Source: Macrostomum lignano (Eukaryota). From it: 64,000 bases of DNA. Of the stretch, positions 3,210-40,005 are shown piece after piece (the stretch's first letter is position 1; each line of letters begins with the position of its first letter). The notes beneath the pieces are model-generated. The model saw only the letters and a list, made by a program, of their open reading frames with translations, was not told the DNA's origin and ran no database searches. The stretch spans positions 10,493 through 74,492 of the forward strand of contig NIVC01003837.1 in assembly GCA_002269645.1 (NCBI GenBank). The letters are read 5' to 3'. A program made the position numbers and the translations under genes.

Positions 3210-8257
<5,048 letters not shown>

Positions 8258-8644
8258 CTGTTGAATTTGCATTTTGGTCGGGCTTTATGTAAATTAACCC
8301 CGAAAGCCGGAGCGAAGGCAGTTCGGTTGAGTCGACTTTATAATTAGTGCTCAGGTAGGTATATTTAAGGCGTGCCGCAATGACGCAGTGAAAAATTCCT
8401 TTGAGACCAGTTGCGATAAAAAGATAGAGAGATTCTAAGAAAGTCTCGTTTCAAACTGTGACCCTGCGAAGATACGCTGAACTTCTGCTTTGGAAGAAAG
8501 AAAATGTATTTATTTTCTTACCTGCGTTCAACAGAGATCGGAGCTATATAGAAAAATCAGAGACTGCTTAGGGAAACCGGATTGTTCTTTTCTCTCGTTT
8601 CAAACATGACCTTATTTGAGGCTAATACAGAGATTCGCCGCTTC

Positions 8645-15234: not shown

Positions 15235-17715
15235 ATTCCATTCAATCGAATCTACCAGCCAGGAAGAAGAAACGAGGCAGAAGCCCCAATTCCTCGGAGG
15301 ACGAAGAACGAAACGAGCAAAAAGTCCTAATTCTGGAGGAAGGCACCCCCATTGCCTGCACTAGCCGATGGAATACTGATTACGCAATAGTTGCCAAAGA
15401 TCTTCACAATTCCAAACTAATCAAACCTAATGAAAACCGCCGCGCCTGCCACAAAATCGAAGTCATAACTTATAGATCCGATACGGTAGCGATTCGACAG
15501 TTGTGCGACTTTTAACATCTTTGTCTGGCTATTAAAGCTTTTGCTGACAATCTTCGGCTGTCAGTCAAAAGTTGTCGCACGGAAGACACTCTGGTTGGAC
15601 ACCATGCGACAGCGTTTGTACAAGCTGGAATACAAATGCAGTAATGGAGTCAAAGTGAAACCAGAGCAGGTTTTGCAACGTGCGATCTCTCGAATTGGCG
15701 AACGCAAGTACGATTCCAAATGGAACAATGACCAGGACTTCGTTCGCTGGTGCTGCACCAAGCACTGCGACAACCAGAAGTATTTTGAAATTCCAGTCAA
15801 GTCAATTGATCAACTGAAAAGCGTTTTTGACGCAAACGGAAGGAAAAAATATGCACTTATTGATGCAAACGGAAGGAAAAGATATGCACTTATTGATGCA
15901 AACGGAAAGAATAGATATGCACTTATTGATGCAAACGGAAAAAATAGATATGCACTTATTGATGCAAACGGAAAGAATAGATATGCACTTTTTGATGCAA
16001 ACAGAAGGAAAATATATGCGCTTATTGATTCAAAACTGTTAACTTTATTGTCCAATTTCACTGAGCTCAGACACCAGGATAAATCACATATGGTACTTAC
16101 ATGTACTGTAGACAATTTGTGTAAAGACACTTCATGCTGCAGTGGAAACAGTTCGTGTTGCAGTGAAGGCACTTCATCTTGTTGTAGAAACACTTTGTGT
16201 TGCAGAGAAGACACTTCGTGCTGCAGAGAAGACACTTCGTGCTGCAGAGAAGACACTTCGTGCTGCAGAGAAGACACTTCGTGCTGCAGAGAAGACACTT
16301 CGTGCTGCAGAGAAGACACTTCGTGCTGCAGAGAAGACACTTCGTGCTGCAGAGAAGACACTTCGTGTTGCTGTGAAAACACTCCGTTTTGTTGCAAACG
16401 TTATAAGTACTTCTTTACGGTTCAGAAAGTCGAAGTAAAGTCAAGAACAAGAAATAAAGAAATAAAGAGCTTCGGGCTTTCAGCTGTTTCTTAAGAGACT
16501 GCAGAGACTGCAGAGGCTGCAAAAGAGTTCTTTGAAAAAAAGACAAAAAAATTGATCGGCAAGTCAATCTGGTTGAACCGTCGTGGCACAGTTCAGACTA
16601 AAATCGATAGCGAGACCTTCTGCAACTGGCTACAAAAGTCAACAACTCCCACGCTAGATGACATTGAGCTGCTGCCATGGGCTGGCGACTGTTGCTGCAG
16701 TTGCTGCAGTTCTCGTCTTTGCTGTGACTCTAAATGCGGTCAACAACCGACATTCAACAGTCATGAATTTGGTGAACACGTTGTCGGTGAACACGTCGAA
16801 GTAAGCCCGAAGCAGGGTACTCCGTACCATATGCTTATCACGGAGATCGTTAATCCAAAAACCAATGATTGCGTTTACAAAGGCATAACCTCCCGATATA
16901 AACAAGGTATTCAACATGAGCAATTTAAGAAACTCAAAGCAATCGTAACCTTCGACCAGGTTGAGTTGCTTGCGTTTAACGACGAACCCAAAGATTTCAC
17001 TCTCGCTAATAGAGAGGCTTCGGGCACAATATCTGATTGCTGGAATTTCTTCTGGATCACATTTCTTGTGCTGTCGTTTATCGTGACGCATTTCCGGTTA
17101 TTAAAAATTCTTGCTGTGGCGGCGCCGCTATTTAAAAATGATAATTGCACAACTCAGCACCTTTTGAAGCCTCCGCTGTGTTTTGACGTTCTTGATGAAG
17201 ACTGCAACTGTCCATGGGAGCAGATCATCATAATCGTTTATGCCAGCATTGCTGGGGTTTGCTTACTCATCTTGATCGGACTGCACTTGTTCGAAGTCCC
17301 GTGCTCGAGAGGCTGTGTCAACGGGTGCCGTCACAGACCGCTTAAGACTACTCGCAAACGGATGAGCTGGAGTTTGATTGAAAGCTCAATTAACTTTGTG
17401 ATTGTTTTTGGTTTGATTTATTTTCAACTTTGGCTCAGGCAAAAATTGAGTAGTGAGTCGAGATTAGGCAACACATATTCATTTCTCATCACGTCTGCTG
17501 TCTCCATCTGCTTGTTTCTCATCAGAGCGCTGCTGCCAAGATGGATCCGCTGCTGCTGCCCGAGCAAGGATGCGGCTTACTGCTCACACTGCTGCCTCTG
17601 CTGCTGGTGCTCTGGCAGCACCGAATGTTGCGGGGTGGCTGATCACGAAGCCATCATTACCAAAGAAGAGGTCCATTTCAACAGGCAAAATGAACTAGCA
17701 GCAGCAAATGCATAG
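15235..17715 (+). pseudogene. Copy 1 of LRAT-like/4TM/Cys-rich gene, disrupted
   Basis: Colinear with the intact 25066-27918 ORF, but lacks its ATG. Frame change near 15300-15330, an extra T at ~15510 (gacttttaac vs gactttaac), and in-frame TAA at 16492 where copy 2 has CAA. Splits into ORFs 15541-16494 and 16552-17715. Acceptor tttgcag| at 15234. Confidence 0.7.
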
Positions 17716-18553
17716 ATGAGTGAACTGCAGTTTTCTGGGTTTTGAAAATAGAAATAGTTCAGTACCGCCTTTGCATGGTGTGTTACAGAATTTACTTAAC
17801 CTAGGAAATGATACGCTCGTATTAATTTTTCAGAGGTGTACTATGACCCGACTTTTTTAACGCTATTCTGTCCCATAGTTCCATAGGTTTACGTGTTGCT
17901 TGTGTGTTTTTCTAAAAATTTTATGTATTTTAAACGTGTTGACTATAAATTTTAACTTTTACATTAAACAATATTTTCATATTTTTGATTGGTACATTAT
18001 TCACATACGAGCTGTCATTGATTTAGAAATGATAAATTCACTAGTTACATGCTAGCTGTTAGATCTTATAGTTTTAGTTACAGTTATCTGTGTTGCTTCA
18101 AAAAATTCTCGTTAGTAGCTATTTTTTACTCTAATACATTGCCAATGTGTTAATCCCATTTCTTTTCATTAAAATTGACGTATTCGCGCGAACTTCTCTT
18201 ATAGCTACATATTAGGTACAGTAGCACATTTTATGCGCTTCCATGAGAAGCGAAGTATAAATTGGAATACAAGAAAAGCTGATTAATTTTAATGCACTCA
18301 GTAACATGAGAGCTCACTCTAAAATATGAGCTGCTGTATTTAAAGTATCGAGTTAGGGAGATCACGAGATGTAAAAAACAATCGCATGAAACCAAGACGA
18401 CATATACTGATAAAGTCATTGGCTAAAAGCATTTTTTAGAACTGCTATTGGACGGAGCTGCATCTGTAGCTGTTTATAAAGTCTCAATCATACTCAAACC
18501 TGCCTGTAGAAATTTTCCCATTAAGAAATCCCAGCTGTCTTTGAAAAAGAAGG

Positions 18554-19440
18554 ATGAAATATTCGTTAAGCAACTTCCAAGCGTTTCAAGCGCTTTTCGG
18601 CATTGTAATCCAGTTGCTGCCTGCAGTGCGGGCTCTGGCGTGTCCGGATCCGTTCAGCCCGAGGCAGGCAGGTGCGTGTTCGTGAGCACTGCTCAAGATT
18701 TCACCTGGTGCGAAGCCAACCAGCGGTGCGCTGCAATCCAGGGCGAGCTGCTCAACTCGTACAGCTCGCTGCAGCTGCTGGCTCAAGGCAGCTTTCCCAG
18801 CCTCCGCTGCAGCTGCTGGCTCAAAGGCAGCTTTCCCAGCCTCCGCTGCAGCTGCTGGCTCAAAGGCAGCTTTCCCAGCCTCCGCTGCAGCTGCTGGCTC
18901 AAAGGCAACTTTCCCAGCCTCCGCTGCAGCTGTTCCCTGTGGCTTGGAGTCAGCGACTTGGCCGATGAACGGAACACAAGCAAATCAGGCTGGGTGAAGA
19001 TCAACGGCAATGGAATTTTTCCCCTCGATAATGCTTTGTGGGCTTCAAATATGCCATCTAACAATGGGAATCAGGACTGCTTGGTGCAGTCTGAAGGAGA
19101 GGCGCTACTCAAGGATTTAAAGTGTTCAACCCGTCGTGGCTACGCATGCGAGTTTGTTGCCAAAGATGAACTGCAGACTGGGCCGACTGGCTCCGTTGCC
19201 TCGTGGAAGCGAACTCCGTTCAAGCGCACCAGCTACAACCCCAGCTCTCGCTACTGCTACTCTGACCTGCAGCAGGTTGGCAACGCAATGAAGTGCGTAG
19301 CGGCTGGCATGAGATCTGGCAACTGCAGACAAGTGCTGTACAACAGCAAGCTGAGAGCCTGCCGCCTGCTGCTGTTCACCGACGCTCAGGTGGAGGAGGA
19401 GATCGAGACGAGCGCCGACTGGGTCAAGTTCAGCGTGTAG
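18554..19440 (+). CDS. Secreted C-type lectin domain + PAN/apple-like C-terminal domain protein (copy 1; 1-nt frameshift at ~18660)
   Basis: ATG at 18554 gives signal-peptide-like MKYSLSNFQAFQALFGIVIQLLPAVRALA. CTLD motifs C.F..TW.EA...C, LWLG.SD, W....P.N.GNQDC, D.KC....YACE. C-terminal C-x-C..LYN...RAC.L pattern. The signal frame and CTLD frame are separated by a missing C (agcccgagg vs agccccgagg in copy 2). Confidence 0.75.
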
Positions 19441-19965: not shown

Positions 19966-20574
19966 AACTCTTATATAAGCCACAATATTTTAGAAATGTC
20001 CCCGTATGTCTTTCCCTCACAGCCATTTCTCAGGAGCCAATTCAGCCACAGTATAATTCCAATATTTCCCCATGAGCCTTGACATCTTAGCAATTCCCCC
20101 AATTACTCCTATATGTTTGATAGCGCGCTTTTTATGGTTGACATGGTGATTATTTTTTTTCGTTCTTTCGTTGAGTTTTCGTTTCTATGAATGAAAAGAA
20201 GTTTTTGATAAAAAATTACATTGCTTCACCAGCACTGCTCTAGAAGATAAGCGCAGCCCAGCAAAATTATCTTTGAATTTAATTGTTAAATACGAGCGGT
20301 CTGGATGAACCTGCATAGGAGACGATCATTTCTGTCACAGGTCACAGAGATAAATCCAACTGAGCTCCACAAAGTTACATGTACATAAAATTCAATAAAT
20401 TAATCTATAGCTCTCTTAGCATTATCTACTACTTTATTGTGTAAGTTCTGTCTTGTATATCCATATAAATTGTAGTATATCGATATTTTGCAATAATTGC
20501 GCCATAAATATTACACGACTACCATCAGATTTGCACTATACTCCCCCAGATTAACACTGCTTCCCTTAGATTAG

Positions 20575-21000
20575 CCCCACTCCCCAGATTAGCACTACCC
20601 CCAGATTAGCACTACCCCCAGATTAGCACTACCCCCAGATTAGCACTACCCCCAGATTAGCACTACCCCCAGATTAGCACTACCCCCAGATTAGCACTAC
20701 CCCAGATTAGCACTACCCCCAGATTAGCACTACCCCCAGATTAGCACTACCCCCAGATTAGCACTACCCCCAGATTAGCACTACCCCCAGATTAGCACTA
20801 CCCCCAGATTAGCACTACCCCCAGATTAGCACTACCCCCAGATTAGCACTACCCCCAGATTAGCACTACCCCCAGATTAGCACTACCCCCAGATTAGCAC
20901 TACCCCCAGATTAGCACTACCCCCAGATTAGCACTACCCCCAGATTAGCACTACCCCCAGATTAGCACTACCCCCAGATTAGCACTACCCCCAGATTAAC
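20575..21000. repeat. 17-bp minisatellite (cccccagattagcacta)n
   Basis: About 25 units. Confidence 0.95.
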
Positions 21001-21625
21001 ACTTCTTCCCCCCCCCCCAAATCTGCATGAAACTGCATGGGAGACAATCATTGTGACAGGTTACAGAGATAAATTCTCTGCTTCAATGCAGATTCGAACT
21101 GCCGACCATCTCCTTAGCCTGTTCCACTCTGCCTACAACGCGGCTATTTCGAAGAAACACATTTTACTGTTCTCTTAACAGTTATCATTTATCCCCTCAG
21201 CAGTCAGCAGTTCTCCTCTCGGCCGGCTCCTCAGTCTCCTCAGTAAACTGCAATGATTCTTTCAATAGTATAAAAATTTTCTCAGCATTTATTACGGCTC
21301 ACTAATTAATTTTCGATACATATCGGCAGTCCTAATGCACAACACAGCGTTTAGCGATACCTTCAGCAGATTAGCAGCATCGTCGGCAGTTTGGCAATTT
21401 CATACTTATATGATGGGATCAGTAATACTCAAAGCAGTTTTAAAAAAATGAAATTTGCTGAACGACTTGTGCCGAATAGCAAAAATAATTCATTAAGTGT
21501 CAAAGTGTGCCTTACTAATAAATAAAACGTTTTCCAATTATCTGCAAATGAATGAATCAATTTTAATTGTCCCCAGTAGGCTCACTCGAACCTGGGACCT
21601 TACGCCTAGCCTAATCCCAGTCCTA

Positions 21626-24885: not shown

Positions 24886-25065
24886 CACAAGCCTCGACTA
24901 CTAATAATAGCGTAAAAGCAAATTTGTTTTAACAACAATTGAAATTCTGTTGCCACTTGCCACTATTGCTTTGAGGCGCAATAGGCAGCTGAAACTATCA
25001 TTTCTTGAATCTGAACTTTAACTTTAGCTAATGGAATCACCTTTAAATCTTTGCAGATTTCAATG

Positions 25066-27918
25066 GACCAATTCGGAAGCTCTGACCAGCCAGGAAGACG
25101 AAACGTGCCCGAAGTCATTCTGCAGGAAGGCACCGCCATTGCCTGCACTAGCCGATGGAATACTGATTACGCAATAGTTGCCAAAGATCTTCACAATTCC
25201 GAACTAATCAAAACTAATGAAAACCGCCGCGCTCGCTACAAAATCGAAGTCATAACTTATAGATCCGTTACGGCAGCGATTCGACAGTTGTGCGACTTTA
25301 ACATCTTTGTCTGGCTAATAAAGCTTTTGCTGACAATCTTCGGCTGTCAACCAGCAGTTGTCGCTCGGAAGACACTCTGGCTGGACACCGAGGGACAGCG
25401 CTTGTACAAGCTGAAATACAATGGCAGTAATGGAGTGGAAGTGCTGCCACCAAATGAGGTGCTGCAACGTGCGATCTCTCGCATTGGCGAACGCAAGTAC
25501 GATTCCAAATGGAACAACGACCAGGACTTCGTTCGCTGGTGCTGCACCAAGCACTGCGACAACCAGAAGTATTTTGAAATTCCAGTCAAGTCAATTGATC
25601 AACTGAAAAGCGTTTTTAACGCAAGTGAAAACGCAAGTAAAAGCGCAAGTGGAAACGCAAGTAAAAACGCAAGTAAAAATGCAAGTGAAAGTAAAAGATA
25701 TGCACTTATTGATGGAAAACTTTTAACTTTTTTGTCCAAGGGCACTGCGCTCAGACACCAGGATAAATCGCATATGGTACTTACTGTAGACAGCTTGTGT
25801 AAAGACACTTCATGTTGCAGTGGAAACACTTGGTGTTGTTGTAAAAAGACTTCGTGTTGCAGTGAAGACACTTCGTGCTGTTGTAAACGTTATAAGGAAT
25901 ACTTATACTTCTTTACGGTTCAGAAAGTCGAAGTAAAACCAGGAACAAGAAATCAAGAAATCAAGAGCTTAGGCCTCTCGGCCGTTTCTCAAGAGACTGC
26001 AGAGACTGCAGAGGCTGCAAAGGCTGCAAAAGAATTCCTCGAATTCCTCGAAGAAAAGACAAAAGAATTGATCGGCAAGTCAATCTGGTTGAATCGTCGT
26101 GGAACAGTTCAGAGTAAAATCGATAGCAAGACCTTCTGCAACTGGCTGCAACAGTCAACAGTTGACACGCTAGATGACATTGAGCTGCTGCCAGGGGCTG
26201 GCGACCGTTGCTGCAGTTGCTGCAGTTGCTGGAGTTCGCTTTGCTGCGGCTCGAAATGCTGTCAACCAGCGACATCCGACGGTCATGAATTTAGAGTCGG
26301 TGAACACGTCGAAGTAAGCCCGGAGCAGGGTACTCCGTACCATATGATTATCACGGAGATTGTTAATCCGAGTACAGATGATTGCGTTTACAAAGGCATA
26401 ACCTACCGATATAAGAAGCCTATAGATAATGATAAAGGGCAACTTAAGCAACCTAAAAAAGGTATGCAACATGAGCAAGATGTGCAACACGAGCAAGATG
26501 TGCAACATGAGCAAGATGTGCAACATGAGCAAGATGTGCAACATGAGCAAGATGTGCAACACGAGCAAGATGTGCAACATGAGCAAGATGTGCAACACGA
26601 GCAAGACGTGCAACATGAGCAAGATGTGCAACACGAGCAAGACGTGCAACATGATCAAGATGCGCAACACGAGCAAGACGTGCAACATGAGCATGATGTG
26701 CAACATGAGCAAGATGTGCAACATGAGCAAGATGTGCAACATGATCAAGATGTGCAACACGAGCAAGATGTGCAACATGAGCAAGATGTGCAACACGAGC
26801 AAGATGTGCAACATGAGCAAGATGTGCAACACGAGCAAGATGTGCAACATGAGCAAGATGTGCAACACGAGCAAGATGTGCAACATGAGCAAGATGTGCA
26901 ACACGAGCAAGATGTGCAACATGAGCAAGATGTGCAACATGAGCAAGATGTGCAACATGAGCAAGATGTGCAACACGAGCAAGATGTGCAACATGAGCAA
27001 GATGTGCAACACGAGCAAGATGTGCAACATGAGCAAGATGTGCAACATGAGCAAGATGTGCAACATGAGCAAGATGTGCAAAACGAGCAAGGTGTGCAAC
27101 CTAAGCAAGATGTGCAAAACGAGCAAGGTGTGCAACCTAAGCAAGTTGAGAAACTCGAAGCAATCGTAACCTTCGACCAGGTTGAGTTGCTTGCGTTTAA
27201 CGAGGAACCCGAAAATTTCATTGACGCGAACAAGCAGATTTCGGGTACAATATCTGCTTGCTGGAATTTCTTTTGGGGCACATTTCGTGTGCTGTCGTTT
27301 ATCGTGACGAATTTTCGGGTATTAAAAATTTTTGCTGTGGCGACGCCGCTTTTCAAACATGATAAATGCACAACTCAGCGCCTTCTGAAGCCTCCGCTGT
27401 GTTTTCATATTTTTGATGAAGACTGCAACTGTCCATGGGAGCAGCTCATCATAATAGTCTATGCCAGCATTGTTGGGGTCTGCTTACTCATCTTGATCGG
27501 ACTGCACTTCGTCGAAGCCCTGTGCTCAGGATGCTGTCGTCACAGGCCGCTTGAGATTACTCGCAAACGGATGACCTGGAGTTCGATTGAAAGCATAGCT
27601 GACTTTCTGATTATTGTTGGATTGATTTATTTTCAACTTTGGCTCAGACAAGCCTTGAGTGACACATTCAACAACGCAGGTTCATTTCCTATCACGTCCG
27701 CTGTCTCCATCTGCTTGTTTCTCATCAGAGCGCTGCTGCCAAGATGGATCCGCTGCTGCTGCCCGAGCAAGGATGCGGCTTACTGCTCACACTGCTGCTT
27801 CTGCTGCTGGTGCTCTGGCAGCACCGAATGTTGCGGGGTGGCTGATCACGAAGCCATCATTACCAAAGAAGAGGTCCATTTCAACAGGCAAAATGAACCA
27901 CCAGCAGCAAATGCATAG
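25066..27918 (+). CDS. Uncharacterised membrane protein: tandem degenerate LRAT/NlpC-P60-like domains, HEQDVQ repeat, ~4 TM helices, Cys-rich tail (copy 2, intact)
   Basis: ~950-aa single-exon ORF after acceptor tttgcag| (25058). EVLQRAISRIGERKYDSKWNNDQDFVRWCC matches the LRAT C-terminal motif (V..RA.S.LG...Y....NNCEHF..WC). Four hydrophobic segments lie near the C-terminus, followed by a CC/CXXCC-rich tail. Confidence 0.75.
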   Translation, partial: DQFGSSDQPGRRNVPEVILQEGTAIACTSRWNTDYAIVAKDLHNSELIKTNENRRARYKIEVITYRSVTAAIRQLCDFNIFVWLIKLLLTIFGCQPAVVARKTLWLDTEGQRLYKLKYNGSNGVEVLPPNEVLQRAISRIGERKYDSKWNNDQDFVRWCCTKHCDNQKYFEIPVKSIDQLKSVFNASENASKSASGNASKNASKNASESKRYALIDGKLLTFLSKGTALRHQDKSHMVLTVDSLCKDTSCCSGNTWCCCKKTSCCSEDTSCCCKRYKEYLYFFTVQKVEVKPGTRNQEIKSLGLSAVSQETAETAEAAKAAKEFLEFLEEKTKELIGKSIWLNRRGTVQSKIDSKTFCNWLQQSTVDTLDDIELLPGAGDRCCSCCSCWSSLCCGSKCCQPATSDGHEFRVGEHVEVSPEQGTPYHMIITEIVNPSTDDCVYKGITYRYKKPIDNDKGQLKQPKKGMQHEQDVQHEQDVQHEQDVQHEQDVQHEQDVQHEQDVQHEQDVQHEQDVQHEQDVQHEQDVQHDQDAQHEQDVQHEHDVQHEQDVQHEQDVQHDQDVQHEQDVQHEQDVQHEQDVQHEQDVQHEQDVQHEQDVQHEQDVQHEQDVQHEQDVQHEQDVQHEQDVQHEQDVQHEQDVQHEQDVQHEQDVQHEQDVQHEQDVQHEQDVQNEQGVQPKQDVQNEQGVQPKQVEKLEAIVTFDQVELLAFNEEPENFIDANKQISGTISACWNFFWGTFRVLSFIVTNFRVLKIFAVATPLFKHDKCTTQRLLKPPLCFHIFDEDCNCPWEQLIIIVYASIVGVCLLILIGLHFVEALCSGCCRHRPLEITRKRMTWSSIESIADFLIIVGLIYFQLWLRQALSDTFNNAGSFPITSAVSICLFLIRALLPRWIRCCCPSKDAAYCSHCCFCCWCSGSTECCGVADHEAIITKEEVHFNRQNEPPAANA
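26467..27140 (+). repeat. 18-bp coding repeat (QHEQDV)n
   Basis: About 37 in-frame units inside the copy-2 ORF. Confidence 0.95.
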
Positions 27919-28756
27919 ATGAGTGAACTGCAGTTTTCTGGGTTTTGAAAATAGAAATAGTTCAGTACCGCCTTTGCATGGTGTGTTACAGAATTTACTT
28001 AACCTAGGAAATGATACGCTCGTATTAATTTTTCAGAGGTGTACTATGACCCGACTTTTTTAACGCTATTCTGTCCCATAGTTCCATAGGTTTACGTGTT
28101 GCTTGTGTGTTTTTCTAAAAATTTTATGTATTTTAAACGTGTTGACTATAAATTTTAACTTTTACATTAAACAATATTTTCATATTTTTGATTGGTACAT
28201 TATTAACATACGAGCTGTCATTGATTTAGAAATGATAAATTCACTAGTTACATGCTAGCTGTTAGATCTTATAGTTTTAGTTACAGTTATCTGTGTTGCT
28301 TCAAAAAATTCTCGTTAGTAGCTATTTTTTACTCTAATACATTGCCAATGTGTTAATCCCATTTCTTTTCATTAAAATTGACGTATTCGCGCGAACTTCT
28401 CTTATAGCTACATATTAGGTACAGTAGCACATTTTATGCGCTTCCATGAGAAGCGAAGAATAAATTGGAATACTAGAAAAGCTGATTAATTTTTAGGCAC
28501 TCAGTAACATGAGAGCTCACTCTAAAATATGAGCTGCTGTATTTAAAGTATCGAGTTAGGGAGATCACGAGATGTAAAAAACAATCGCATGAAACCAAGA
28601 CGACATATACTGATAAAGTCATTGGCTAAAAGCATTTTTTAGAACTGCTATTGGACGGAGCTGCATTTGTAGCTGTTTATAAAGTCTCAATCATACTCAA
28701 ACCTGCCTGTAGAAATTTTCCCATTAAGAAATCCCAGCTGTCTTTGAAAAAGAAGG

Positions 28757-29481
28757 ATGAAATATTCGTTAAGCAACTTCCAAGCGTTTCAAGCGCTTTT
28801 CGGCACTGTAATTCAGCTGGCACCTGCAGTGCGGGCTCTGGCGTGTCCGGATCCGTTCAGCCCCGAGGCAGGCAGGTGCGTGTTCGTGAGCACTGCTCAA
28901 GATTTCACCTGGTGCGAAGCCAACCAGCGGTGCGCTGCAATCCAGGGCGAGCTGCTCAACTCGTACAGCTCGCTGCAGCTGCTGGCTCAAGGCAGCTTTC
29001 CCAGCCTCCGCTGCAGCTGCTGGCTCAAAGGCAGCTTTCCCAGCCTCCGCTGCAGCTGCTGGCTCAAAGGCAGCTTTCCCAGCCTCCGCTGCAGCTGCTG
29101 GCTCAAAGCAACTTTCCCAGCCTCCGCTGCAGCTGTTCCCTGTGGCTTGGAGTCAGCGACTTGGCCGATGAACGGAACACAAGCAAATCAGGCTGGGTGA
29201 AGATCAACGGCAATGGAATTTTGCCCCTCGATAATGCTTTGTGGGCTTCAAATATGCCATCTAACAATGGGAATCAGGACTGCTTAGTGCAGTCTGAAGG
29301 AGAGGCGCTACTCAAGGATTTAAAGTGTTCAACCCGTCGTGGCTACGCATGCGAGTTTGTTGCCAAAGATGAACTTCAGACTGGGCCGACTGGCTCCGCT
29401 GCGTCTGTGCCTTCGGGATCTGCCCTCATGAGTGTGAATCGGTCAATTTTTGTGCACAAGCCCCAAACTACAACTATGTGA
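28757..29481 (+). CDS. C-type lectin gene copy 2 (1-nt frameshift at ~29109; PAN-like domain missing)
   Basis: Near-identical to copy 1 up to 29398. The signal peptide is in frame with the CTLD start, but a G is missing at tggctcaaagcaac (copy 1 aaaggcaac). The sequence diverges after GPTGS, so the C-terminal domain is absent. May be a pseudogene. Confidence 0.6.
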
Positions 29482-31325: not shown

Positions 31326-31505
31326 CGCGTCGCTGCTGGCCCGCACCGCGCATTTAGACTCGCTTTGGGCTGGCGGAGAACTCGTGGCCTCGTGGTCGGA
31401 GAGGCTCTCGCGGCCCGACTGCCACAGCTGCCCGTGGGCGGTGGCGGCTTCGGTCGCGTGATGCAGCACTGCAGCCAGCAGCAGAGTGAATTGACCTGAC
31501 CTTTA

Positions 31506-32890
<1,385 letters not shown>

Positions 32891-32947
32891 GTAAGTCTCG
32901 ATATTTTTTAATAGCATCCAGCAATCTGCGCCCTCGTTGGGGCGCCC

Positions 32948-33260
32948 GTCTCCTAGGTAGGCACCCCTGTCTCCTAGGTAGGCACCCCTGTCTCCTAGGT
33001 AGGCACCCCTGTCTCCTAGGTAGGCACCCCTGTCTCCTAGGTAGGCACCCCTGTCTCCTAGGTAGGCACCCCTGTCTCCTAGGTAGGCACCCCTGTCTCC
33101 TAGGTAGGCGACCCTGTCTCCTAGGTAGGCGACCCTGTCTCCTAGGTAGGAGACCCTGTCTGCTAGGTAGGAGACCCTGTCTGCTAGGTAGGCGACCCTG
33201 TCTGCTAGGTAGGCGACCCTGTCTCCTAGGTAGGATACCCTGTCTGCTAGGTAGGAGACC
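32948..33260. repeat. 21-bp minisatellite (cctaggtaggcacccctgtct)n
   Basis: About 15 units. Confidence 0.95.
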
Positions 33261-34078
33261 CTATCTATACTATCCGTGGCCTTTTTGCTTAGTCATTTCG
33301 CGATAGCAGCGTAGCATGATACGTCGTAGCTTTAGCACCAAGCAGACAAGAGCAAACAGCTGCTAACTTCTCTGCGTTCTCTGAATCTTTTATTTCTTGC
33401 TTGAAATTCAATTGAGTTATACTTATACAAAAATGCCGACGATCAGTCTTGCGTTCCTGGCTGCGCCAGCAACTACATAAGCGGTGAAAGGTGCACCGTG
33501 TGTATACTTTTCCGGAAGTCGAAGTCGTAGTCGAAAAATTAAATTCGCACTGCTTCAACATTTATTTTTGCGGCATGAACTGGCAAGCAATACTATTATG
33601 CTTAATTTAATTATTAAGGCAAATAAGGCGAATTATAAGGCGAATTTAATTTTTTGACTACGACTTTCGACGTCGGCCCGACGTCCGACCAATAGGAAAC
33701 ACGTAATGTTACATAGACGTCGTACGACGTCGGTCAGAGGTCGGTGCGACGTCGGCCGACGTCGGATTGTTGTACGGGATTAAACTTTAATTTCTATTAA
33801 TTTATTATACACATCGCTTCACAAGCAAAAAGGCCACTAAAACGATAGACATATACATTCAAAGCGGCCTTTTTAGAATTCTGCCAATATTTGCAAGTGC
33901 AACATCCTGTGTTGCTTATAGTATAGTATTCCATGGAAATTTACTGGAGGGGAAAGCTACAGAGAGCAATCAAAAGTAATAGGGAAAACACGTTGCAGAA
34001 AACCTATTATTATCCTGTTAGTCCGTTAGTCCGACGTTCCGAATGAATAGACCATTCGTGGTGGCCGATTAACGCTTT

Positions 34079-34440
34079 GGGGGGGGGGTTCACAAACTCG
34101 AAATTTCACGTCGAAAGCACCTCTTTCACAAGGTCGAAAACTCAAATAGCAGCCACTTTCACAAGGTCGAAACTTCACAAGGTCGAAATTTTACAGCATC
34201 GAAAACTTTAGCAAGGCACTTCATAAGGTCGAATTTCACAAGGTCTAAATTTCACAACGTAAAAACAACTGCATGGTTCTTGTTATACTAAGTTTTCGAT
34301 TGACGTTGTGAAATTTCGACCTTATGAAGCCCCTTGCTAAAGTTTTCGATGTTGTGAAATTTCGACCTTGTGAAGTTTCGATCCTGTGAAATAATTTACT
34401 TCTCGACGTTGTGAAATTTCAACCTTATGAAAGCACCCCT
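34079..34440. mobile_element. MITE with internally repeated gaaatttc(g)acc TIRs
   Basis: Left and right thirds are inverted repeats built from ttcacaaggtcgaaatttcac units; same family as 41421-41646. Confidence 0.7.
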
Positions 34441-34457
34441 TCACGCTGGCCAGATTT

Positions 34458-37400
34458 GGGTGTGTATAAAAGCTGGCACTGGCACATTGGACACATTGGA
34501 CACCCCTTTTTATAACAAAATTAGATATGAAAATGCAGAATAAACTTGCGGAGATACTTTTAAATAATTTAAAAAATTGATAATAATAGAAATGACATCC
34601 TTGCTTTCGTGATAGATGATTTGTTAAATATTCTTTGTATTATCGTTTTTTGTACATGTTTAATTTGGCATTCGATTTTTTAAAATAATCGCACATGCAA
34701 AAACTGCAGCTTGCAATGCTATTACACTGTGATTTTACTACCCGAAGGTTCTGTACTACAGGCGTACCGATTTAATGCTAAATATGTCTGATATATGAAA
34801 TGATCAAACTAATAGTCAGAACTCAATTTTCCATAAAATGATGAAGCATTCTGCTCTTATAAAAAAACCACAACTTATTTTGTTAGGATTACTTCATGAA
34901 GAACGAACTTTGGATATTCCAAATTGCAAGTATTTCTATATTAAAAAAGTTAATACATTGGCAGATTATTTGATGAAAAAATTGCACCCAAAAAGTTTTT
35001 TTTACTTTGTAAGATGATGATTAAATTAATAATTTCCAAGCTTCTTCTTTTATTAGTTCAATTACTTTTTGTATGATTTCAACCAACAAAAAAAGGAATA
35101 GCTACTCAGTGAAAGTTCAAATTACAGTCTCTTCTTTATATACAATCCTTTTAAGAAAACATTATTATGAATAATTTGCCAAGTCATGATATTTAAGAAA
35201 TTGTGCTAATCATTTAAATTATGAGTTAAAAAATGCAAGCATATAAGTAAAAAATCTACCTCACAGACCAAGAAGTCTTTTTACTAAAAGTTTATATGTG
35301 ACGCTTTGAAAAAAAAACATATAAACCATCTTCACATAACATTTATTGTCATTTATTTCAGACCTAAATCCTTTAGCACATAAATATTCTGCACATATGT
35401 TGCAGGGTATACTTCCTTCTTCTAAAATCCTACAAATGCCACAAAGTTTTAATAGGCAAATTTATTCGTATTGTTTATATTAATATTTCTATATTTATGA
35501 GAAGTTTTCCAATAAGAACAAGTTCCCAATCAGTAAAACACTATATTTTAATTCTAATGTCCAAAATTATGGCATTCTAAGGGACCAAGTGATAGGTTTT
35601 AAGCTACTATTAGCACCTGCATGATTTATTTATTTAATACCTACACATTCCTTAATGTCTATAGTTCGCCTAATTGCCTAATTGCTAACCCTAATTCTAG
35701 CCTTCTTGGCTTACAAGTTTGAGTCTTCACAGCATATTATTCAATTCAAGCCCTACTAATTTTATTAGCCTCTCTTAATTTTATAAAATAATAATTTTCT
35801 TTAGTGTAACTGCTCCAAAAATTTCAACTTTAATTTAAGTGGTGTGCCGAAACACCACTTGCACCATTACAGCCGTCTATAATTTTTTGTGCTAATTGGT
35901 TGACCACTTTCAATAATTTTCTTGGGTCAAGAGTGTGATATATGCATATTGCAGCATGAATTTTTTAAAGAATCCCTAATTTTATACAAGGAATCATATA
36001 TATTTATAGAAAGTTAGCTCTTAGAGTAGAGATAAAGTACATAAGACTATTAATAGCAACTTTTCATACAATTGCTTATGGTAATGATTTCTATTGTTAT
36101 AAAGTTACAAATAAATAAAAAGTTACATTGCATTTAAACTGTACTTTATGAGTTGTAAGCCTTTCAACTCAGAGTTCACTTCAATTGCTTTAATATACAT
36201 TGCTAGATGTTATTTAGCATTTCTTTGTTATTTATCATTTAACTCATTGCATTGTTTAATTGCTAATTTCATTTGCTCAGCTGCAATATTTATTACTTTT
36301 TTATTAATGCCAATGTTTGTAATACTTTTTCTCCCCATTTTTAGTGTTTGTGGTATTCTTTTGTCAAATTTTAATTTTCCGCTGTATCTATCTTTACAAA
36401 AAATTGTACCTGTAAACTTATGGTTTTTTGCTTACAATGGTGCTGTACTAAATTATATTTATTTCCTTGTTAGATTCTCTAAATTGAAAAAGTAATGCAC
36501 TGCTTTATTATCATGCATATTGAATATTAAGGATAGTTAGTATTCCTTCCTTGAAAAAGATTCTAGAGTTGGATTCTATTTGATAAGAGAATAAATAATT
36601 TATTGAGTTTAAATGTTTTTAAAACATTAATTAATTGCATTTTGATGGAAATCACAACTTAAAAAAATTATTCGTTTTTTTTATTTAAGACACGGGGGAT
36701 TTTAAAAATCCATATTAACAGCAAATCAAACATTATGGGAGAGAGAGAGAGAGAAGTATTAGATTCACTTTCACCATTGCTGTTGATTTATGGAAAGGCA
36801 GTAAACAAGCCAGAGCAGCTGCAAATAGTCAAATATGCCATGTCCGGCAATAAAATTCTGCAACTAGTCTGCTGCTCACTTTTTCCAACGTTTATTGAGG
36901 ACAAGAAACGGCATTTAATGTTTCTATGTTTTCTGTAAGTGCACCAACTAGGTAAATGAAAATGACGTACCGAAAGTAGTTCGACAATAAAGCAAGATAA
37001 GAAATGAATTTAAATGTAGAATAAAACTTGTTGATACTACCAATCTCATGGTTGTTAGAAGTATATGAAAAAGTGCAATTATAAATAAATATTTACATTT
37101 TTATTCGAAAGCCAAAGTATATTTATTCAAGCAAAACAACGATCAAAACTCGATTTTTGTTAACATAAGGGGTGTCCAATGTGCCAATGGTGCCCTGCTT
37201 TTATACAGACCCTCTGGCTTATACAAACCTTTTATACAAACCTCTGGCGGGTCTGTATAAAAGCAGGGCACCATTGGCACATTGGACACCCCTTATGTTA
37301 ACAAAAATCGAGTTTTGATCGTTGTTTTGCTTGAATAAATATACTTTGGCTTTCGAATAAAAATGTAAATATTTATTTATAATTGCACTTTTTCATATAC

Positions 37401-40005
37401 TTCTAACAACCATGAGATTGGTAGTATCAACAAGTTTTATTCTACATTTAAATTCATTTCTTATCTTGCTTTATTGTCGAACTACTTTCGGTACGTCATT
37501 TTCATTTACCTAGTTGGTGCACTTACAGAAAACATAGAAACATTAAATGCCGTTTCTTGTCCTCAATAAACGTTGGAAAAAGTGAGCAGCAGACTAGTTG
37601 CAGAATTTTATTGCCGGACATGGCATATTTGACTATTTGCAGCTGCTCTGGCTTGTTTACTGCCTTTCCATAAATCAACAGCAATGGTGAAAGTGAATCT
37701 AATACTTCTCTCTCTCTCTCTCCCATAATGTTTGATTTGCTGTTAATATGGATTTTTAAAATCCCCCGTGTCTTAAATAAAAAAAACGAATAATTTTTTT
37801 AAGTTGTGATTTCCATCAAAATGCAATTAATTAATGTTTTAAAAACATTTAAACTCAATAAATTATTTATTCTCTTATCAAATAGAATCCAACTCTAGAA
37901 TCTTTTTCAAGGAAGGAATACTAACTATCCTTAATATTCAATATGCATGATAATAAAGCAGTGCATTACTTTTTCAATTTAGAGAATCTAACAAGGAAAT
38001 AAATATAATTTAGTACAGCACCATTGTAAGCAAAAAAACCATAAGTTTACAGGTACAATTTTTTGTAAAGATAGATACAGCGGAAAATTAAAATTTGACA
38101 AAAGAATACCACAAACACTAAAAATGGGGAGAAAAAGTATTACAAACATTGGCATTAATAAAAAAGTAATAAATATTGCAGCTGAGCAAATGAAATTAGC
38201 AATTAAACAATGCAATGAGTTAAATGATAAATAACAAAGAAATGCTAAATAACATCTAGCAATGTATATTAAAGCAATTGAAGTGAACTCTGAGTTGAAA
38301 GGCTTACAACTCATAAAGTACAGTTTAAATGCAATGTAACTTTTTATTTATTTGTAACTTTATAACAATAGAAATCATTACCATAAGCAATTGTATGAAA
38401 AGTTGCTATTAATAGTCTTATGTACTTTATCTCTACTCTAAGAGCTAACTTTCTATAAATATATATGATTCCTTGTATAAAACTAGGGATTCTTTAAAAA
38501 ATTCATGCTGCAATATGCATATATCACACTCTTGACCCAAGAAAATTATTGAAAGTGGTCAACCAATTAGCACAAAAAATTATAGACGGCTGTAATGGTG
38601 CAAGTGGTGTTTCGGCACACCACTTAAATTAAAGTTGAAATTTTTGGAGCAGTTACACTAAAGAAAATTATTATTTTATAAAATTAAGAGAGGCTAATAA
38701 AATTAGTAGGGCTTGAATTGAATAATATGCTGTGAAGACTCAAACTTGTAAGCCAAGAAGGCTAGAATTAGGGTTAGCAATTAGGCAATTAGGCGAACTA
38801 TAGACATTAAGGAATGTGTAGGTATTAAATAAATAAATCATGCAGGTGCTAATAGTAGCTTAAAACCTATCACTTGGTCCCTTAGAATGCCATAATTTTG
38901 GACATTAGAATTAAAATATAGTGTTTTACTGATTGGGAACTTGTTCTTATTGGAAAACTTCTCATAAATATAGAAATATTAATATAAACAATACAAATAA
39001 ATTTGCCTATTAAAACTTTGTGGCATTTGTAGGATTTTAGAAGAAGGAAGTATACCCTGCAACATATGTGCAGAATATTTATGTGCTAAAGGATTTAGGT
39101 CTGAAATAAATGACAATAAATGTTATGTGAAGATGGTTTATATGTTGTTTTTTCAAAGCGTCACATATAAACTTTCAGTAAAAAGACTTCTTGGTCTGTG
39201 AGGTAGATTTTTTACTTATATGCTTGCATTTTTTAACTCATAATTTAAATGATTAGCACAATTTCTTAAATATCATGACTTGGCAAATTATTCATAATAA
39301 TGTTTTCTTAAAAGGATTGTATATAAAGAAGAGACTGTAATTTGAACTTTCACTGAGTAGCTATTCCTTTTTTTGTTGGTTGAAATCATACAAAAAGTAA
39401 TTGAACTAATAAAAGAAGAAGCTTGGAAATTATTAATTTAATCATCATCTTACAAAGTAAAAAAAACTTTTTGGGTGCAATTTTTTCATCAAATAATCTG
39501 CCAATGTATTAACTTTTTTAATATAGAAATACTTGCAATTTGGAATATCCAAAGTTCGTTCTTCATGAAGTAATCCTAACAAAATAAGTTGTGGTTTTTT
39601 TATAAGAGCAGAATGCTTCATCATTTTATGGAAAATTGAGTTCTGACTATTAGTTTGATCATTTCATATATCAGACATATTTAGCATTAAATCGGTACGC
39701 CTGTAGTACAGAACCTTCGGGGTAGTAAAATCACAGTGTAATAGCATTGCAAGCTGCAGTTTTTGCATGTGCGATTATTTTAAAAAATCGAATGCCAAAT
39801 TAAACATGTACAAAAAACGATAATACAAAGAATATTTAACAAATCATCTATCACGAAAGCAAGGATGTCATTTCTATTATTATCAATTTTTTAAATTATT
39901 TAAAAGTATCTCCGCAAGTTTATTCTGCATTTTCATATCTAATTTTGTTATAAAAAGGGGTGTCCAATGTGTCCAATGTGCCAGTGCCAGCTTTTATACA
40001 CACCC
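34458..40005. mobile_element. 5.5-kb palindrome: two inverted copies of a ~2.76-kb TIR-bounded non-autonomous DNA element
   Basis: Arms 34458-37212 and 37249-40005 are reverse complements with only a few differences (mirror ORFs 36148-36495/37988-38314 and 36735-36938/37523-37726). 36-bp spacer. Each arm has its own TIRs (gggtgtgtataaaagc..ggcacattggacacccctt / gggtctgtataaaagc..). ccagattt occurs at 34450 and 40011. Confidence 0.93.

What the first reader, a model, noticed from the sequence alone, without database searches (positions are those of the whole stretch)
25066..27918. Novel architecture: tandem 'dead' LRAT/NlpC-P60-like domains fused to a 4-TM module and Cys-rich tail
Seen: the first ~165 aa read like an LRAT/HRASLS domain, but the catalytic NNCEHF motif is NNDQDF and the His-bearing strand reads NTDYAI. 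Two further degenerate repeats are plausible: IPVKSIDQLK..KSHMVL..ELIGKSIW..IDSKTFCNW, and GEHVEV..TPYHMIITEIVN. Four hydrophobic segments follow, with a Cys-containing loop (KCTT..PLCF..DCNCPWE) and a CC-rich tail. Established: LRAT/PLAAT enzymes need the NCEHF Cys, and LRATD1/2 (FAM84) are pseudoenzymes with this Cys substituted. Inference: a lineage-specific membrane sensor/scaffold whose pseudoenzyme domains bind lipid or protein; the tail may be palmitoylated. I do not recognise this domain combination.
Basis: partly seen in the sequence, partly recalled or inferred. Interest (0 to 1): 0.72.

Follow-up and report, generated by a model that had tools for sequence, protein, structure and literature searches.

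The report
Flatworm membrane protein with dead LRAT domains
This is an intact 951-residue gene of the flatworm Macrostomum lignano, a divergent member of a species-specific family of multi-LRAT-domain membrane proteins in which no lipid-acyltransferase-like unit keeps a conserved catalytic cysteine; it is an unusual variant of a known enzyme superfamily and its function is unknown.

Summary
Window 25063-27918 (+) is one uninterrupted 951-codon ORF.

- **Unit 1 (aa 15-165)** is a genuine LRAT/PLAAT-type domain (Pfam PF04970, 27.0 bits against a 24.3 cutoff; hhalign 99% against validated LRAT domains). All three catalytic positions are replaced: His to Asp35, His to Thr65, Cys to Asp153.
- **Unit 2** is supported indirectly. 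It is homologous to unit 2 of M. lignano paralogs (z=8.3), and that paralog unit matches LRAT (z=10-14).
- **Unit 3** is only weakly supported (3 of 170 shuffles reach its score).
- **AlphaFold models** of units 2 and 3 had low confidence, so the fold test was inconclusive.
- **Membrane part:** four hydrophobic segments, a four-cysteine loop and cysteine strings are all present and conserved in the only close relative, A0A1I8HFC8 (43% identity by BLASTP).

The architecture is not wholly new. M. lignano encodes 800-1400 aa "LRAT domain-containing" paralogs built from two copies of the same three-unit module, usually with a live last unit (NNCEHF) and C-terminal membrane helices. Bivalves and a hemichordate have similar arrays. 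The target has one module, no conserved nucleophile, an orphan four-pass Cys-rich module and a 38-copy QHEQDV insert. A damaged tandem copy lies 10 kb upstream. Verdict: a new variant of a known kind, probably a palmitoylated non-catalytic membrane scaffold. Function and transcription are untested.

The parts
25063..27918 (+). Complete 951-codon ORF of the target gene (copy B), ATG to stop, no intron needed
   Evidence: An acceptor-like tttgcag ends 7 nt upstream of the ATG.
25105..25557 (+). Unit 1 (aa 15-165): LRAT/PLAAT-type domain, catalytically dead
   Evidence: Pfam PF04970 27.0 bits, E=6.1e-6. hhalign against validated LRAT units 99.1%, E=5e-19, z=40. Best PDB sequence hit is 4q95 HRASLS3/LRAT chimera, E=0.88, in the same register.
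25159..25176 (+). NTDYAI (aa 33-38): strand that carries the catalytic His in LRAT enzymes. The His position is Asp35 (Lys in P0001).
   Evidence: hhalign column correspondence
25261..25356 (+). Hydrophobic insert of about 32 residues (aa 67-98) in unit 1, between strand 3 and strand 4. This is the position of the PLAAT L1 loop and the LRAT-specific insert.
   Evidence: Left unaligned as an insertion by hhalign. Kyte-Doolittle peak 1.89. 4q95 alignment. L1 loop role taken from PMC8154263.
25513..25530 (+). NNDQDF (aa 151-156) in place of NNCEHF. The nucleophile Cys is Asp153 (Ser in P0001).
25558..26178 (+). Unit 2 (aa 166-372): degenerate LRAT-like unit. The helix IDSKTFCNW has Ser355 at the nucleophile position.
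   Evidence: Target unit 2 against paralog unit 2: hhalign E=1e-4, z=8.3, 0/40 shuffles. Paralog unit 2 against LRAT: E=2.5e-5, z=10-14. No direct Pfam or PDB hit. AlphaFold pLDDT 38.5.
25618..25690 (+). 12-bp coding repeat (NASK units) in the linker at the start of unit 2
25798..25899 (+). Cys string 1 (aa 246-279, 12 Cys), a 21/42-bp slippage repeat inserted in a loop of unit 2. Expanded to nine CCREDTS units in copy A and absent in P0001.
26179..26271 (+). Linker with Cys string 2 (aa 373-403, 9 Cys) between units 2 and 3
26272..26412 (+). Unit 3, N-terminal strands (aa 404-450: GEHVEV, PYHMIITEI with His427, YKGITYRY)
   Evidence: hhalign against LRAT covers 49 columns in the correct register, E=0.018, 3/170 shuffles reach it. 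Collinear with the live last unit of the paralogs. The low-confidence AlphaFold model shows strand-strand-strand-loop-strand-strand-helix order.
26465..27145 (+). 18-bp x 37.8 tandem repeat encoding about 36-38 QHEQDV units, inserted in the strand 3-strand 4 loop of unit 3. Absent from copy A and P0001.
27142..27255 (+). Unit 3, C-terminal part (aa 694-731: LEAIVTFDQVELLAFNEEPENFIDANKQ)
   Evidence: Aligns with paralog FLRVTGPGHIEKVVHNSELNWDQIDAK. Statistically weak.
27256..27354 (+). Hydrophobic segment 1 (aa 732-764), starting at SAC733WNFF. Either transmembrane helix 1 or the remnant of the LRAT Cys-helix; the register is ambiguous.
27355..27435 (+). Loop 1 with four Cys conserved in P0001 (C769, C780, C788, C790). 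Inferred to face the outside or lumen.
   Evidence: Topology inferred from the positive-inside rule.
27436..27741 (+). Hydrophobic segments 2-4 (aa 792-822, 843-862, 874-893) with the basic loop CRHRPLEITRKR between segments 2 and 3
   Evidence: Kyte-Doolittle up to 2.96. AlphaFold gives long helices, with its best pLDDT (62-72) on segments 3-4. 43-67% identity to P0001.
27742..27837 (+). Juxtamembrane Cys-rich tail (aa 894-925, 11 Cys; the core CCPS(K/R)D(A/V)AYC(S/T)HCC is conserved in P0001)
15303..17715 (+). Copy A: tandem paralogue of the target (83-95% nt identity). It has no ATG, one extra T that shifts the frame, and an in-frame stop at 16492-16494. It lacks the QHEQDV repeat and has its own repeat expansions.

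Best explanation
SHOWN. The locus is an intact single-exon gene of Macrostomum lignano. Its product is a divergent member of the LRAT/PLAAT branch of the NlpC/P60 papain-like superfamily. The protein carries one copy of a three-unit module that its M. lignano paralogues carry twice. Unit 1 is a clear LRAT domain with His, His and Cys all replaced. Unit 2 is a degenerate LRAT-like unit with Ser at the nucleophile position. Unit 3 is a probable LRAT remnant. No unit has a nucleophile Cys conserved between the target and its only close relative. The loops of these units have taken up large inserts: a hydrophobic 32-mer in unit 1, a Cys string in unit 2, and about 36-38 QHEQDV units in unit 3. The C-terminal 220 residues have four hydrophobic segments, a four-Cys loop and a Cys-rich tail. 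These are conserved in the relative but undetectable anywhere else.

INFERRED. There is no signal peptide, and the positive charges sit in loop 2 and in the tail. This gives an N-in/C-in four-pass topology, with the LRAT-like units in the cytosol and loop 1 (two likely disulfides) outside. The cytosolic Cys strings are probably S-palmitoylated and would pin the units to the bilayer, as the C-terminal helix and L1 loop do in PLAAT enzymes. Lacking a conserved nucleophile, the protein most likely acts as a non-catalytic membrane-surface module. It may bind acyl chains or phospholipid, or act as a partner or decoy for the catalytically live paralogues.
For: - ORF and motifs.
- Species: a UniProt M. 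lignano fragment (A0A1I8H6L1) is identical to aa 1-62.
- Unit 1 is LRAT: Pfam 27.0 bits against 24.3; hhalign 99.1%, z=40; substitutions mapped column by column.
- The Cys-His-His triad and the NCEHFV motif define active PLAAT/LRAT enzymes (PMC8154263).
- Paralogue family: 7 of the 21 listed hits of the profile search are long M. lignano LRAT-family proteins. The alignment is collinear over 509 columns, 99.5%.
- Unit 2 by transitivity: z=8.3, then z=10-14.
- Unit 3: weak signal in the right register.
- The paralogues are an internal duplication of the three-unit module (99%, E=3e-18).
- No upstream exons for further units in the window.
- Purifying selection: mosaic conservation with P0001, at 70% in the unit 1 C-half, 73% in the unit 2 helices and 58-67% in loop 2, segment 3 and the tail, against 17-22% in the repeats and the C-terminal end. 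The ORF stays intact over 951 codons while copy A carries three defects at Ks of about 0.16.
- Hydropathy and helices.
Against: - No structural confirmation for units 2 and 3: AlphaFold pLDDT 38.5 and 46.8, and Foldseek found nothing at E<1.
- Units 2 and 3 of the target do not hit Pfam LRAT or PDB directly.
- Unit 3 against the paralogues' live unit is not significant (4/40 shuffles).
- The N-terminal strands of P0001's unit 3 also give a weak hit to an unrelated beta domain (Peptidase_U32_C, E=0.0015).
- There is no transcript evidence. The only database gene model for this locus is a 70-aa fragment with a frame-shifting intron, and the full product is not in a collection of 15 billion proteins.
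- Ka/Ks against copy A is 0.4-0.7, which is compatible with relaxed constraint.
- Palmitoylation, topology and any binding function are inference only.
Confidence: 0.6

Rival explanations
1. The protein is still an enzyme. Unit 3 of the target keeps a His (His427 in PYHMIITEI) and a Cys (Cys733 in SACWNFF) that one alignment places on the catalytic His and the NCEHF Cys of the live paralogue unit. Alternatively, unit 2 uses Ser355 with His237. The protein would then be a membrane-bound acyltransferase or phospholipase with two regulatory dead units, like its paralogues.
For: MAFFT alignment A7 puts YHMIITEI on VHFIVTKW and ISACWNFF on FNNCEHFV. Copy A also has DCWNFF. Most paralogues keep a live last unit, so 'dead, dead, live' is the family norm.
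Against: Three methods give three different registers for Cys733. P0001 has Leu at that position and no Cys anywhere in the segment. His237 is Leu in P0001. The second triad His has no counterpart. Unit 3 against LRAT is only marginally significant.
Confidence: 0.12
2. The gene is a decaying or non-functional young paralogue. It would be a recently duplicated, unexpressed or dying copy in a fast-turnover tandem family, whose open frame survives by youth and whose repeats reflect unconstrained slippage.
For: The adjacent copy A has no start codon, a frameshift and a premature stop. There are large lineage-specific coding repeats in both copies. Ka/Ks is 0.4-0.7. The public gene model is a 70-aa fragment and the full-length product is absent from protein collections.
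Against: A 951-codon frame stays open at Ks of about 0.16 from copy A. With roughly 0.08 substitutions per site on each lineage, I estimate several stop codons would be expected under neutrality (estimate based). Conservation with the 43%-identical P0001 is block-wise, with functional-looking blocks at 58-73% and linkers at 17-22%. All slippage repeats are multiples of 3 bp and stay in frame.
Confidence: 0.18
3. The protein handles metal. Its 49 Cys, many in CC/CCC strings, and about 36 His-Asp/Glu hexapeptides would make it mainly a membrane-anchored metal-binding or buffering protein (metallothionein-like or His-rich), with the LRAT units as an inert scaffold.
For: Composition: 49 Cys, about 7% of the residues outside the repeat. 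The repeat has 35 His and 71 Asp+Glu in 227 residues. There is a weak compositional Pfam hit to a Plasmodium His-rich protein.
Against: The QHEQDV array is absent from copy A and P0001. Cys string 1 is absent from P0001 and differs in copy A. So these features are not conserved properties of the subfamily. CC strings next to membrane helices are more typical of S-acylation (general knowledge, not tested here).
Confidence: 0.07

Closest known systems
PLAAT1-5 (HRASLS) and LRAT enzymes (Pfam PF04970; circularly permuted NlpC/P60 papain-like fold)
   Same: Unit 1 matches the LRAT profile over the whole domain. The large insert sits at the L1 loop (LRAT-specific insert) position. The globular part faces the cytosol and is followed by a C-terminal membrane anchor.
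   Different: The Cys-His-His triad is gone in unit 1. There are three units instead of one, four hydrophobic segments instead of a single C-terminal helix, and Cys strings plus a 38-unit acidic/His repeat.
LRATD1/LRATD2 (FAM84A/B), vertebrate LRAT-domain proteins without the catalytic Cys
   Same: Both are LRAT-fold proteins that have lost the nucleophile and presumably act non-catalytically at membranes.
   Different: LRATD1/2 have a single domain, N-myristoylation and no membrane helices. The target starts MDQF (no Gly2), has three units and a four-pass module. Orthology was not tested and is unlikely, given the Macrostomum-specific paralogue family.
Macrostomum lignano multi-LRAT paralogues (e.g. 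PAA47239/A0A267DF96, PAA47238, PAA65928, PAA52141), labelled only 'LRAT domain-containing protein'
   Same: The last three units are collinear with the target's units 1-3, including WN(N/S)xxDFxRWC, the xSxxFCxW helix and the GxHxxx...H strands. Several members continue into hydrophobic C-terminal helices, and the genes are near-intronless and arranged in tandem.
   Different: The paralogues have two three-unit modules. Most (P0002, P0006, P0007, P0008, P0010, P0029) have a live last unit (NNCEHF; YNCEHM in P0006), whereas P0004 and P0005 show no NCEH motif. Their hydrophobic tails show no similarity to the target's four-pass Cys-rich module (z=0.5). They have no Cys strings or QHEQDV repeat.
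Tandem LRAT arrays of other marine invertebrates (Ptychodera flava XP_070560329; Mytilus galloprovincialis VDI83150; Ruditapes philippinarum XP_060585066)
   Same: Several LRAT-like units per protein, many with the Cys replaced (NRSPHF, NKSNHF, NENRHF). Some have a live unit and membrane or Gly-zipper segments.
   Different: They have different unit numbers and orders, and show only domain-level similarity to unit 1. None has the target's four-pass module.

Membership tests
LRAT/PLAAT domain family (PF04970, NlpC/P60 superfamily) | Significant match to the LRAT domain profile | tested here: met
   Unit 1: 27.0 bits against a gathering score of 24.3, E=6.1e-6 on aa 1-180. hhalign 99.1% over the full domain against Pfam-validated LRAT units. 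The hit is not seen when the whole protein is scanned.
LRAT/PLAAT domain family (PF04970, NlpC/P60 superfamily) | Nucleophile Cys in the NCEHF(V) helix | tested here: not met
   Unit 1 has NNDQDF (Asp153; Ser in P0001). Unit 2 has Ser355. In unit 3 no Cys is conserved between the target and P0001.
LRAT/PLAAT domain family (PF04970, NlpC/P60 superfamily) | Catalytic His on strand 2 and a second His (or Asn) on strand 3 | tested here: not met
   Unit 1 has Asp35 and Thr65 (Lys and Ser in P0001). Units 2 and 3 of the target keep a strand-2 His (His237, His427), but His237 is Leu in P0001.
LRAT/PLAAT domain family (PF04970, NlpC/P60 superfamily) | Permuted papain-like fold (three-dimensional structure) | tested here: inconclusive
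   Unit 1 was not modelled. Models of unit 2 and of unit 3 with the membrane module had pLDDT 38.5 and 46.8, and Foldseek gave no match at E<1.
LRAT/PLAAT domain family (PF04970, NlpC/P60 superfamily) | Acyltransferase or phospholipase A activity through a thioester intermediate | not testable with these tools
   Needs biochemistry. The sequence predicts that activity is absent.
M. lignano multi-LRAT paralogue family (unnamed) | Collinear three-unit module: dead LRAT, then the degenerate unit with the xSxxFCxW helix, then a last LRAT unit | tested here: met
   MAFFT and hhalign are collinear over 509 columns, 99.5%. Unit 2 against unit 2 gives z=8.3. Unit 3 correspondence rests on position and weak similarity only.
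M. lignano multi-LRAT paralogue family (unnamed) | Live last unit with NNCEHF | tested here: not met
   The target and P0001 have no NCEH motif. P0005 and P0004 also lack it.
M. lignano multi-LRAT paralogue family (unnamed) | Homologous C-terminal hydrophobic region | tested here: not met
   hhalign of the membrane modules gives E=0.22, z=0.5, with 30/100 shuffles reaching the score.
LRATD1/2 (FAM84) pseudoenzymes | Single Cys-less LRAT domain, N-terminal Gly for myristoylation, no membrane helix | tested here: not met
   The target starts MDQF, has three units and four hydrophobic segments. This is an analogy, not membership. Orthology was not tested.
S-palmitoylated Cys-string membrane proteins | Experimentally detected S-acylation of CC clusters next to the membrane | not testable with these tools
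   Only the sequence context is seen: CSGCC after segment 2, RCCCPS...HCCFCCWC after segment 4, and two Cys strings in linkers.

The most novel reading that the evidence does not exclude
The three-unit LRAT module (dead, degenerate, then last unit) is an undescribed composite super-domain of flatworms. The target/P0001 subfamily would be its fully pseudo-enzymatic form, coupled to a new, orphan four-pass Cys-rich membrane module. It would act as a lipid-sensing or membrane-remodelling regulator that pairs with, or antagonises, the live paralogues. That would make it a dedicated pseudoenzyme regulator of a PLAAT-like membrane-lytic system.
Probability: 0.15. Interest if true: 0.55.

Novelty: new variant of a known kind. 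Interest (0 to 1): 0.36.

Why it matters
LRAT/PLAAT enzymes remodel and even rupture membranes, and catalytically dead relatives (LRATD1/2) are poorly understood. M. lignano offers a natural series from six-unit proteins with one live unit to a three-unit protein with none. It is also a laboratory flatworm in which, as I recall, RNAi and transgenesis are available. That series could show what dead LRAT domains do, for example membrane targeting, substrate presentation or regulation of the live unit. The locus also shows how slippage repeats colonise the loops of a conserved fold (L1 loop inserts of 32 to about 240 residues). By itself the finding is one uncharacterised lineage-specific paralogue without expression data, so its immediate impact is modest.

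Tried and rejected
1. Whole-protein Pfam scan gave only compositional hits (Plasmodium_HRP, FAM222A). LRAT appears only when the N-terminus is scanned alone.
2. The word-indexed homologue search found only P0001, with the single protein and with a family profile. The exhaustive profile search was needed to find the paralogues.
3. Pfam on units 2 and 3 of the target and P0001 gave no LRAT hit. P0001's unit 3 gave a weak Peptidase_U32_C hit, which I judged a generic beta-hairpin similarity.
4. PDB sequence searches: single-sequence unit 1 gave only 4q95 at E=0.88. Profiles of unit 1 and unit 2 gave nothing, and the middle region gave chance hits.
5. AlphaFold2 on unit 2 and on unit 3 plus the membrane module (repeat deleted), with 6-7-row alignments, gave pLDDT 38.5 and 46.8. 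Foldseek against PDB gave no match below E=1.8. These results are treated as uninformative, not negative.
6. The idea that the target's membrane module is homologous to the paralogues' C-terminal helices was rejected (z=0.5).
7. The idea that upstream exons add units a-c was rejected: tblastn with all paralogues finds nothing between copy A and the target.
8. The claim that Cys733 is the retained nucleophile was not adopted, because the register differs between alignments and P0001 has Leu there.
9. Look-ups of the contigs encoding the target and P0001 found nothing on record.
10. Literature searches found no paper on Macrostomum LRAT proteins or on tandem LRAT arrays.
11. Rfam found no RNA family in the window.


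Full report
**What is at the coordinates.** Window 25063-27918 (+) is a single open frame of 951 codons. The first in-frame ATG is at 25063, and an in-frame stop lies 19 codons upstream. All quoted motifs are present. A splice-acceptor-like tttgcag ends 7 nt before the ATG and is conserved in the upstream paralogue. The only polyadenylation-like signal I saw is an ATTAAA about 250 nt after the stop. ORFs on the other frames and strand across 26.2-27.4 kb are by-products of a tandem repeat.

**Organism and relatives.** A 70-aa UniProt entry of Macrostomum lignano (A0A1I8H6L1, P0003) is identical to aa 1-62 and then jumps through a frame-shifting intron to a stop. The window is therefore M. lignano, and the public gene model for this locus is a fragment. 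The full product is not on record. The only close relative among 5.8 billion clustered proteins and 1.84 billion representatives is A0A1I8HFC8 (P0001, 680 aa, 43% identity). It has the same layout but no hexapeptide repeat.

**Tandem duplicate.** Ten kilobases upstream lies a tandem duplicate, copy A (15303-17715), at 83-95% nt identity. Its downstream C-type-lectin-like neighbour was duplicated with it. Copy A has no ATG, one extra T in a T-run that shifts the frame, and a stop at 16492-16494. Ks between the copies is about 0.16 and Ka/Ks is 0.4-0.7.

**Unit 1 is an LRAT domain and is dead.**
- Scanned alone, aa 1-180 hit Pfam PF04970 (LRAT) at 27.0 bits (gathering score 24.3), E=6.1e-6. The whole-protein scan missed it because of compositional bias.
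- A profile of the target plus P0001 aligns to eleven LRAT units taken from other hits, which I verified by Pfam. The result is 99.1% probability, E=5e-19, covering the whole domain, with z=40 against column shuffles.
- Column by column, the strand-2 catalytic His is Asp35 (Lys in P0001), the strand-3 His is Thr65 (Ser in P0001), and the NCEHF Cys is Asp153 (Ser in P0001).
- Active PLAAT/LRAT enzymes depend on this Cys-His-His triad and the NCEHFV helix (PMC8154263).
- A hydrophobic 32-residue insert (aa 67-98) sits between strands 3 and 4. This is where PLAATs have the disordered, possibly membrane-anchoring L1 loop and where LRAT has its specific insert.

**The wider family.** The exhaustive profile search returned 21 proteins with E<=1e-3.
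- Seven are 800-1400 aa M. lignano proteins named only 'hypothetical' or 'LRAT domain-containing'.
- The others include Ptychodera flava, Mytilus and Ruditapes proteins with several LRAT-like units, many of them Cys-less.
- The M. lignano paralogues align collinearly with the target from its unit 1 onward.
- In that alignment, a dead unit (WNSxRDFARWC) matches unit 1, and a degenerate unit ending in xSxDFCxW matches the target's IDSKTFCNW.
- A last unit follows; it is live in most paralogues (NNCEHFVNYLIYGR, Pfam-positive). Hydrophobic helices follow in several members.
- The N and C halves of the paralogues match each other (99%, E=3e-18). The paralogues therefore carry two copies of a three-unit module, and the target carries one.
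- No exons for extra units lie upstream of the target in the window.

**Units 2 and 3.**
- Unit 2 of the target does not hit LRAT directly. It is homologous to paralogue unit 2 (E=1e-4; z=8.3; 0/40 shuffles), and paralogue unit 2 matches LRAT over 114 columns (E=2.5e-5; z=10-14).
- The nucleophile position in unit 2 is Ser355, which is also Ser or Asp in the paralogues.
- Unit 3 is weaker. Its strands (GEHVEV, PYHMIITEI, YKGITYRY) align to LRAT strands 1-3 in the right register, but only at E=0.018, and 3 of 170 shuffles reach the score. Its match to the paralogues' live unit is not significant.
- Whether Cys733 (SACWNFF) corresponds to the NCEHF Cys depends on the aligner, and P0001 has Leu there. 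I do not count it as a conserved nucleophile.
- AlphaFold2 models with 6-7-row alignments were of low confidence (pLDDT 38.5 and 46.8), and Foldseek found nothing. The secondary-structure order predicted for unit 3 (three strands, loop, two strands, helices) is compatible with LRAT but carries little weight.
- My estimates that each unit derives from an LRAT domain are about 99% for unit 1, 85% for unit 2 and 70% for unit 3.

**Inserts.**
- The 18-bp x 37.8 repeat (26465-27145) encodes about 36-38 QHEQDV units in the strand 3-strand 4 loop of unit 3. It is absent from copy A and P0001.
- Cys string 1 (12 Cys) lies in a loop of unit 2. It is expanded to nine CCREDTS units in copy A and is missing in P0001.
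- Cys string 2 links units 2 and 3 and is longer in P0001.
- All of these are in-frame slippage products and evolve fast.

**Membrane module.**
- Hydropathy gives four segments (aa 732-764, 792-822, 843-862, 874-893). The model draws them as long helices, with its best confidence on segments 3-4.
- Loop 1 has four Cys conserved in P0001, loop 2 is strongly basic (CRHRPLEITRKR), and the tail begins RWIRCCCPSKDAAYCSHCC.
- With a hydrophilic N-terminus and the positive-inside rule, I infer an N-in/C-in four-pass topology, with the LRAT-like units and Cys strings in the cytosol.
- This module has no detectable homologue other than P0001 in the exhaustive search. It shows no similarity to the paralogues' hydrophobic tails (z=0.5) and no Pfam family.

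**Is the gene alive?**
- Identity to P0001 is mosaic: 70% in the unit 1 C-half, 73% in the unit 2 helices, 67% in loop 2, 60% in segment 3 and 58% in the Cys tail. It falls to 17-22% in the repeats and at the C-terminal end. This is the signature of purifying selection.
- The frame stays open over 951 codons while the sister copy is damaged.
- Against this, there is no transcript evidence, the public model is truncated, and Ka/Ks against copy A is moderate.
- I give 'functional gene' about 0.8.

**Mechanism.** The following is inference. The protein is most likely a cytosol-facing array of non-catalytic LRAT-like domains held on a membrane by a four-pass module and by S-acylated Cys strings. 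It would act as an acyl-chain or phospholipid-binding scaffold, or as a partner of the live paralogues. Rival readings are residual catalysis through His427/Cys733, a decaying paralogue, and a metal-binding role. They are listed with their evidence in the Rival explanations section.

**Comparison and novelty.** By homology the protein belongs to the LRAT domain family, but it fails that family's catalytic criteria. It is analogous to the vertebrate LRATD1/2 proteins and is not a member of that group. It is a divergent member of an unnamed, unstudied M. lignano multi-LRAT family (no literature found). I class it as a new variant of a known kind, with interest 0.36.

Noticed in passing
window 15303-17715 (+): Tandem paralogue (copy A) of the target. 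It has a lost ATG, a +1 T frameshift near 15490 and an in-frame stop at 16492-16494. It carries its own coding repeats (six ANGKNRYALID units, nine CCREDTS units) and no QHEQDV array. The single-base indel lies in a T-run and could be an assembly error.
   Followed up: yes
window 18448-19440 (+) and 28651-29481 (+): C-type-lectin-like ORFs (Pfam Lectin_C, E=0.024 and 0.009, both below the cutoff) were duplicated together with the LRAT-like gene. Both contain a 39-bp coding tandem repeat (SFPSLRCSCWLKG units; 28971-29135).
   Followed up: partly
window 44538-45293, 47304-48152, 51569-52564 (+): Exons of a ubiquitin-activating enzyme E1 (ThiF E=7.5e-52, E1_FCCH, UBA_E1_SCCH E=4.7e-52, E1_UFD). 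This is a conserved housekeeping gene downstream of the LRAT-like cluster.
   Followed up: partly
window 20514-21071; 31612-32239; 32873-33329: Long, very homogeneous tandem repeats of 17 bp (about 33 copies, many identical), 36 bp and 21 bp. The 36-bp array lies inside overlapping minus-strand ORFs 31354-32612, which are therefore probably repeat artefacts.
   Followed up: no
window 34000-40000: AT-rich block (GC 0.28-0.32, against 0.42-0.54 elsewhere). Symmetrical chance tblastn hits at 36893-36958 (-) and 37503-37568 (+) hint at an inverted duplication.
   Followed up: no
window 25249-25585: The public model A0A1I8H6L1 (P0003) removes this stretch as an intron (GT after YKIE, AG before SSQLIN*). 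That shifts the frame and truncates the protein to 70 aa. It is probably an annotation artefact, or else a non-productive isoform.
   Followed up: partly
P0002/P0007 (contig NIVC01004522.1, locus L001) and P0008/P0022 (a 167,875-bp contig): Multi-LRAT paralogues of M. lignano appear to sit in pairs on the same contigs (inferred from identical longest-contig lengths). The P0007 gene spans 3082 nt for 999 codons, so it is nearly intron-free. The family seems to grow by local tandem duplication, as seen in the window.
   Followed up: partly
P0002, P0004-P0008, P0010 (M. lignano paralogues): Each paralogue is an internal duplication of a three-unit module (N half against C half: hhalign 99%, E=3e-18). 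A conserved LCVHND..DC.L.GGG motif sits just before the fourth unit, and the target lacks it.
   Followed up: partly
window 4027-4872 (-) and 7406-8272 (-): ORFs with weak ankyrin-repeat hits (E of about 3e-3) and a weak talin FERM F0 hit (E=3e-4), all below Pfam cutoffs.
   Followed up: no
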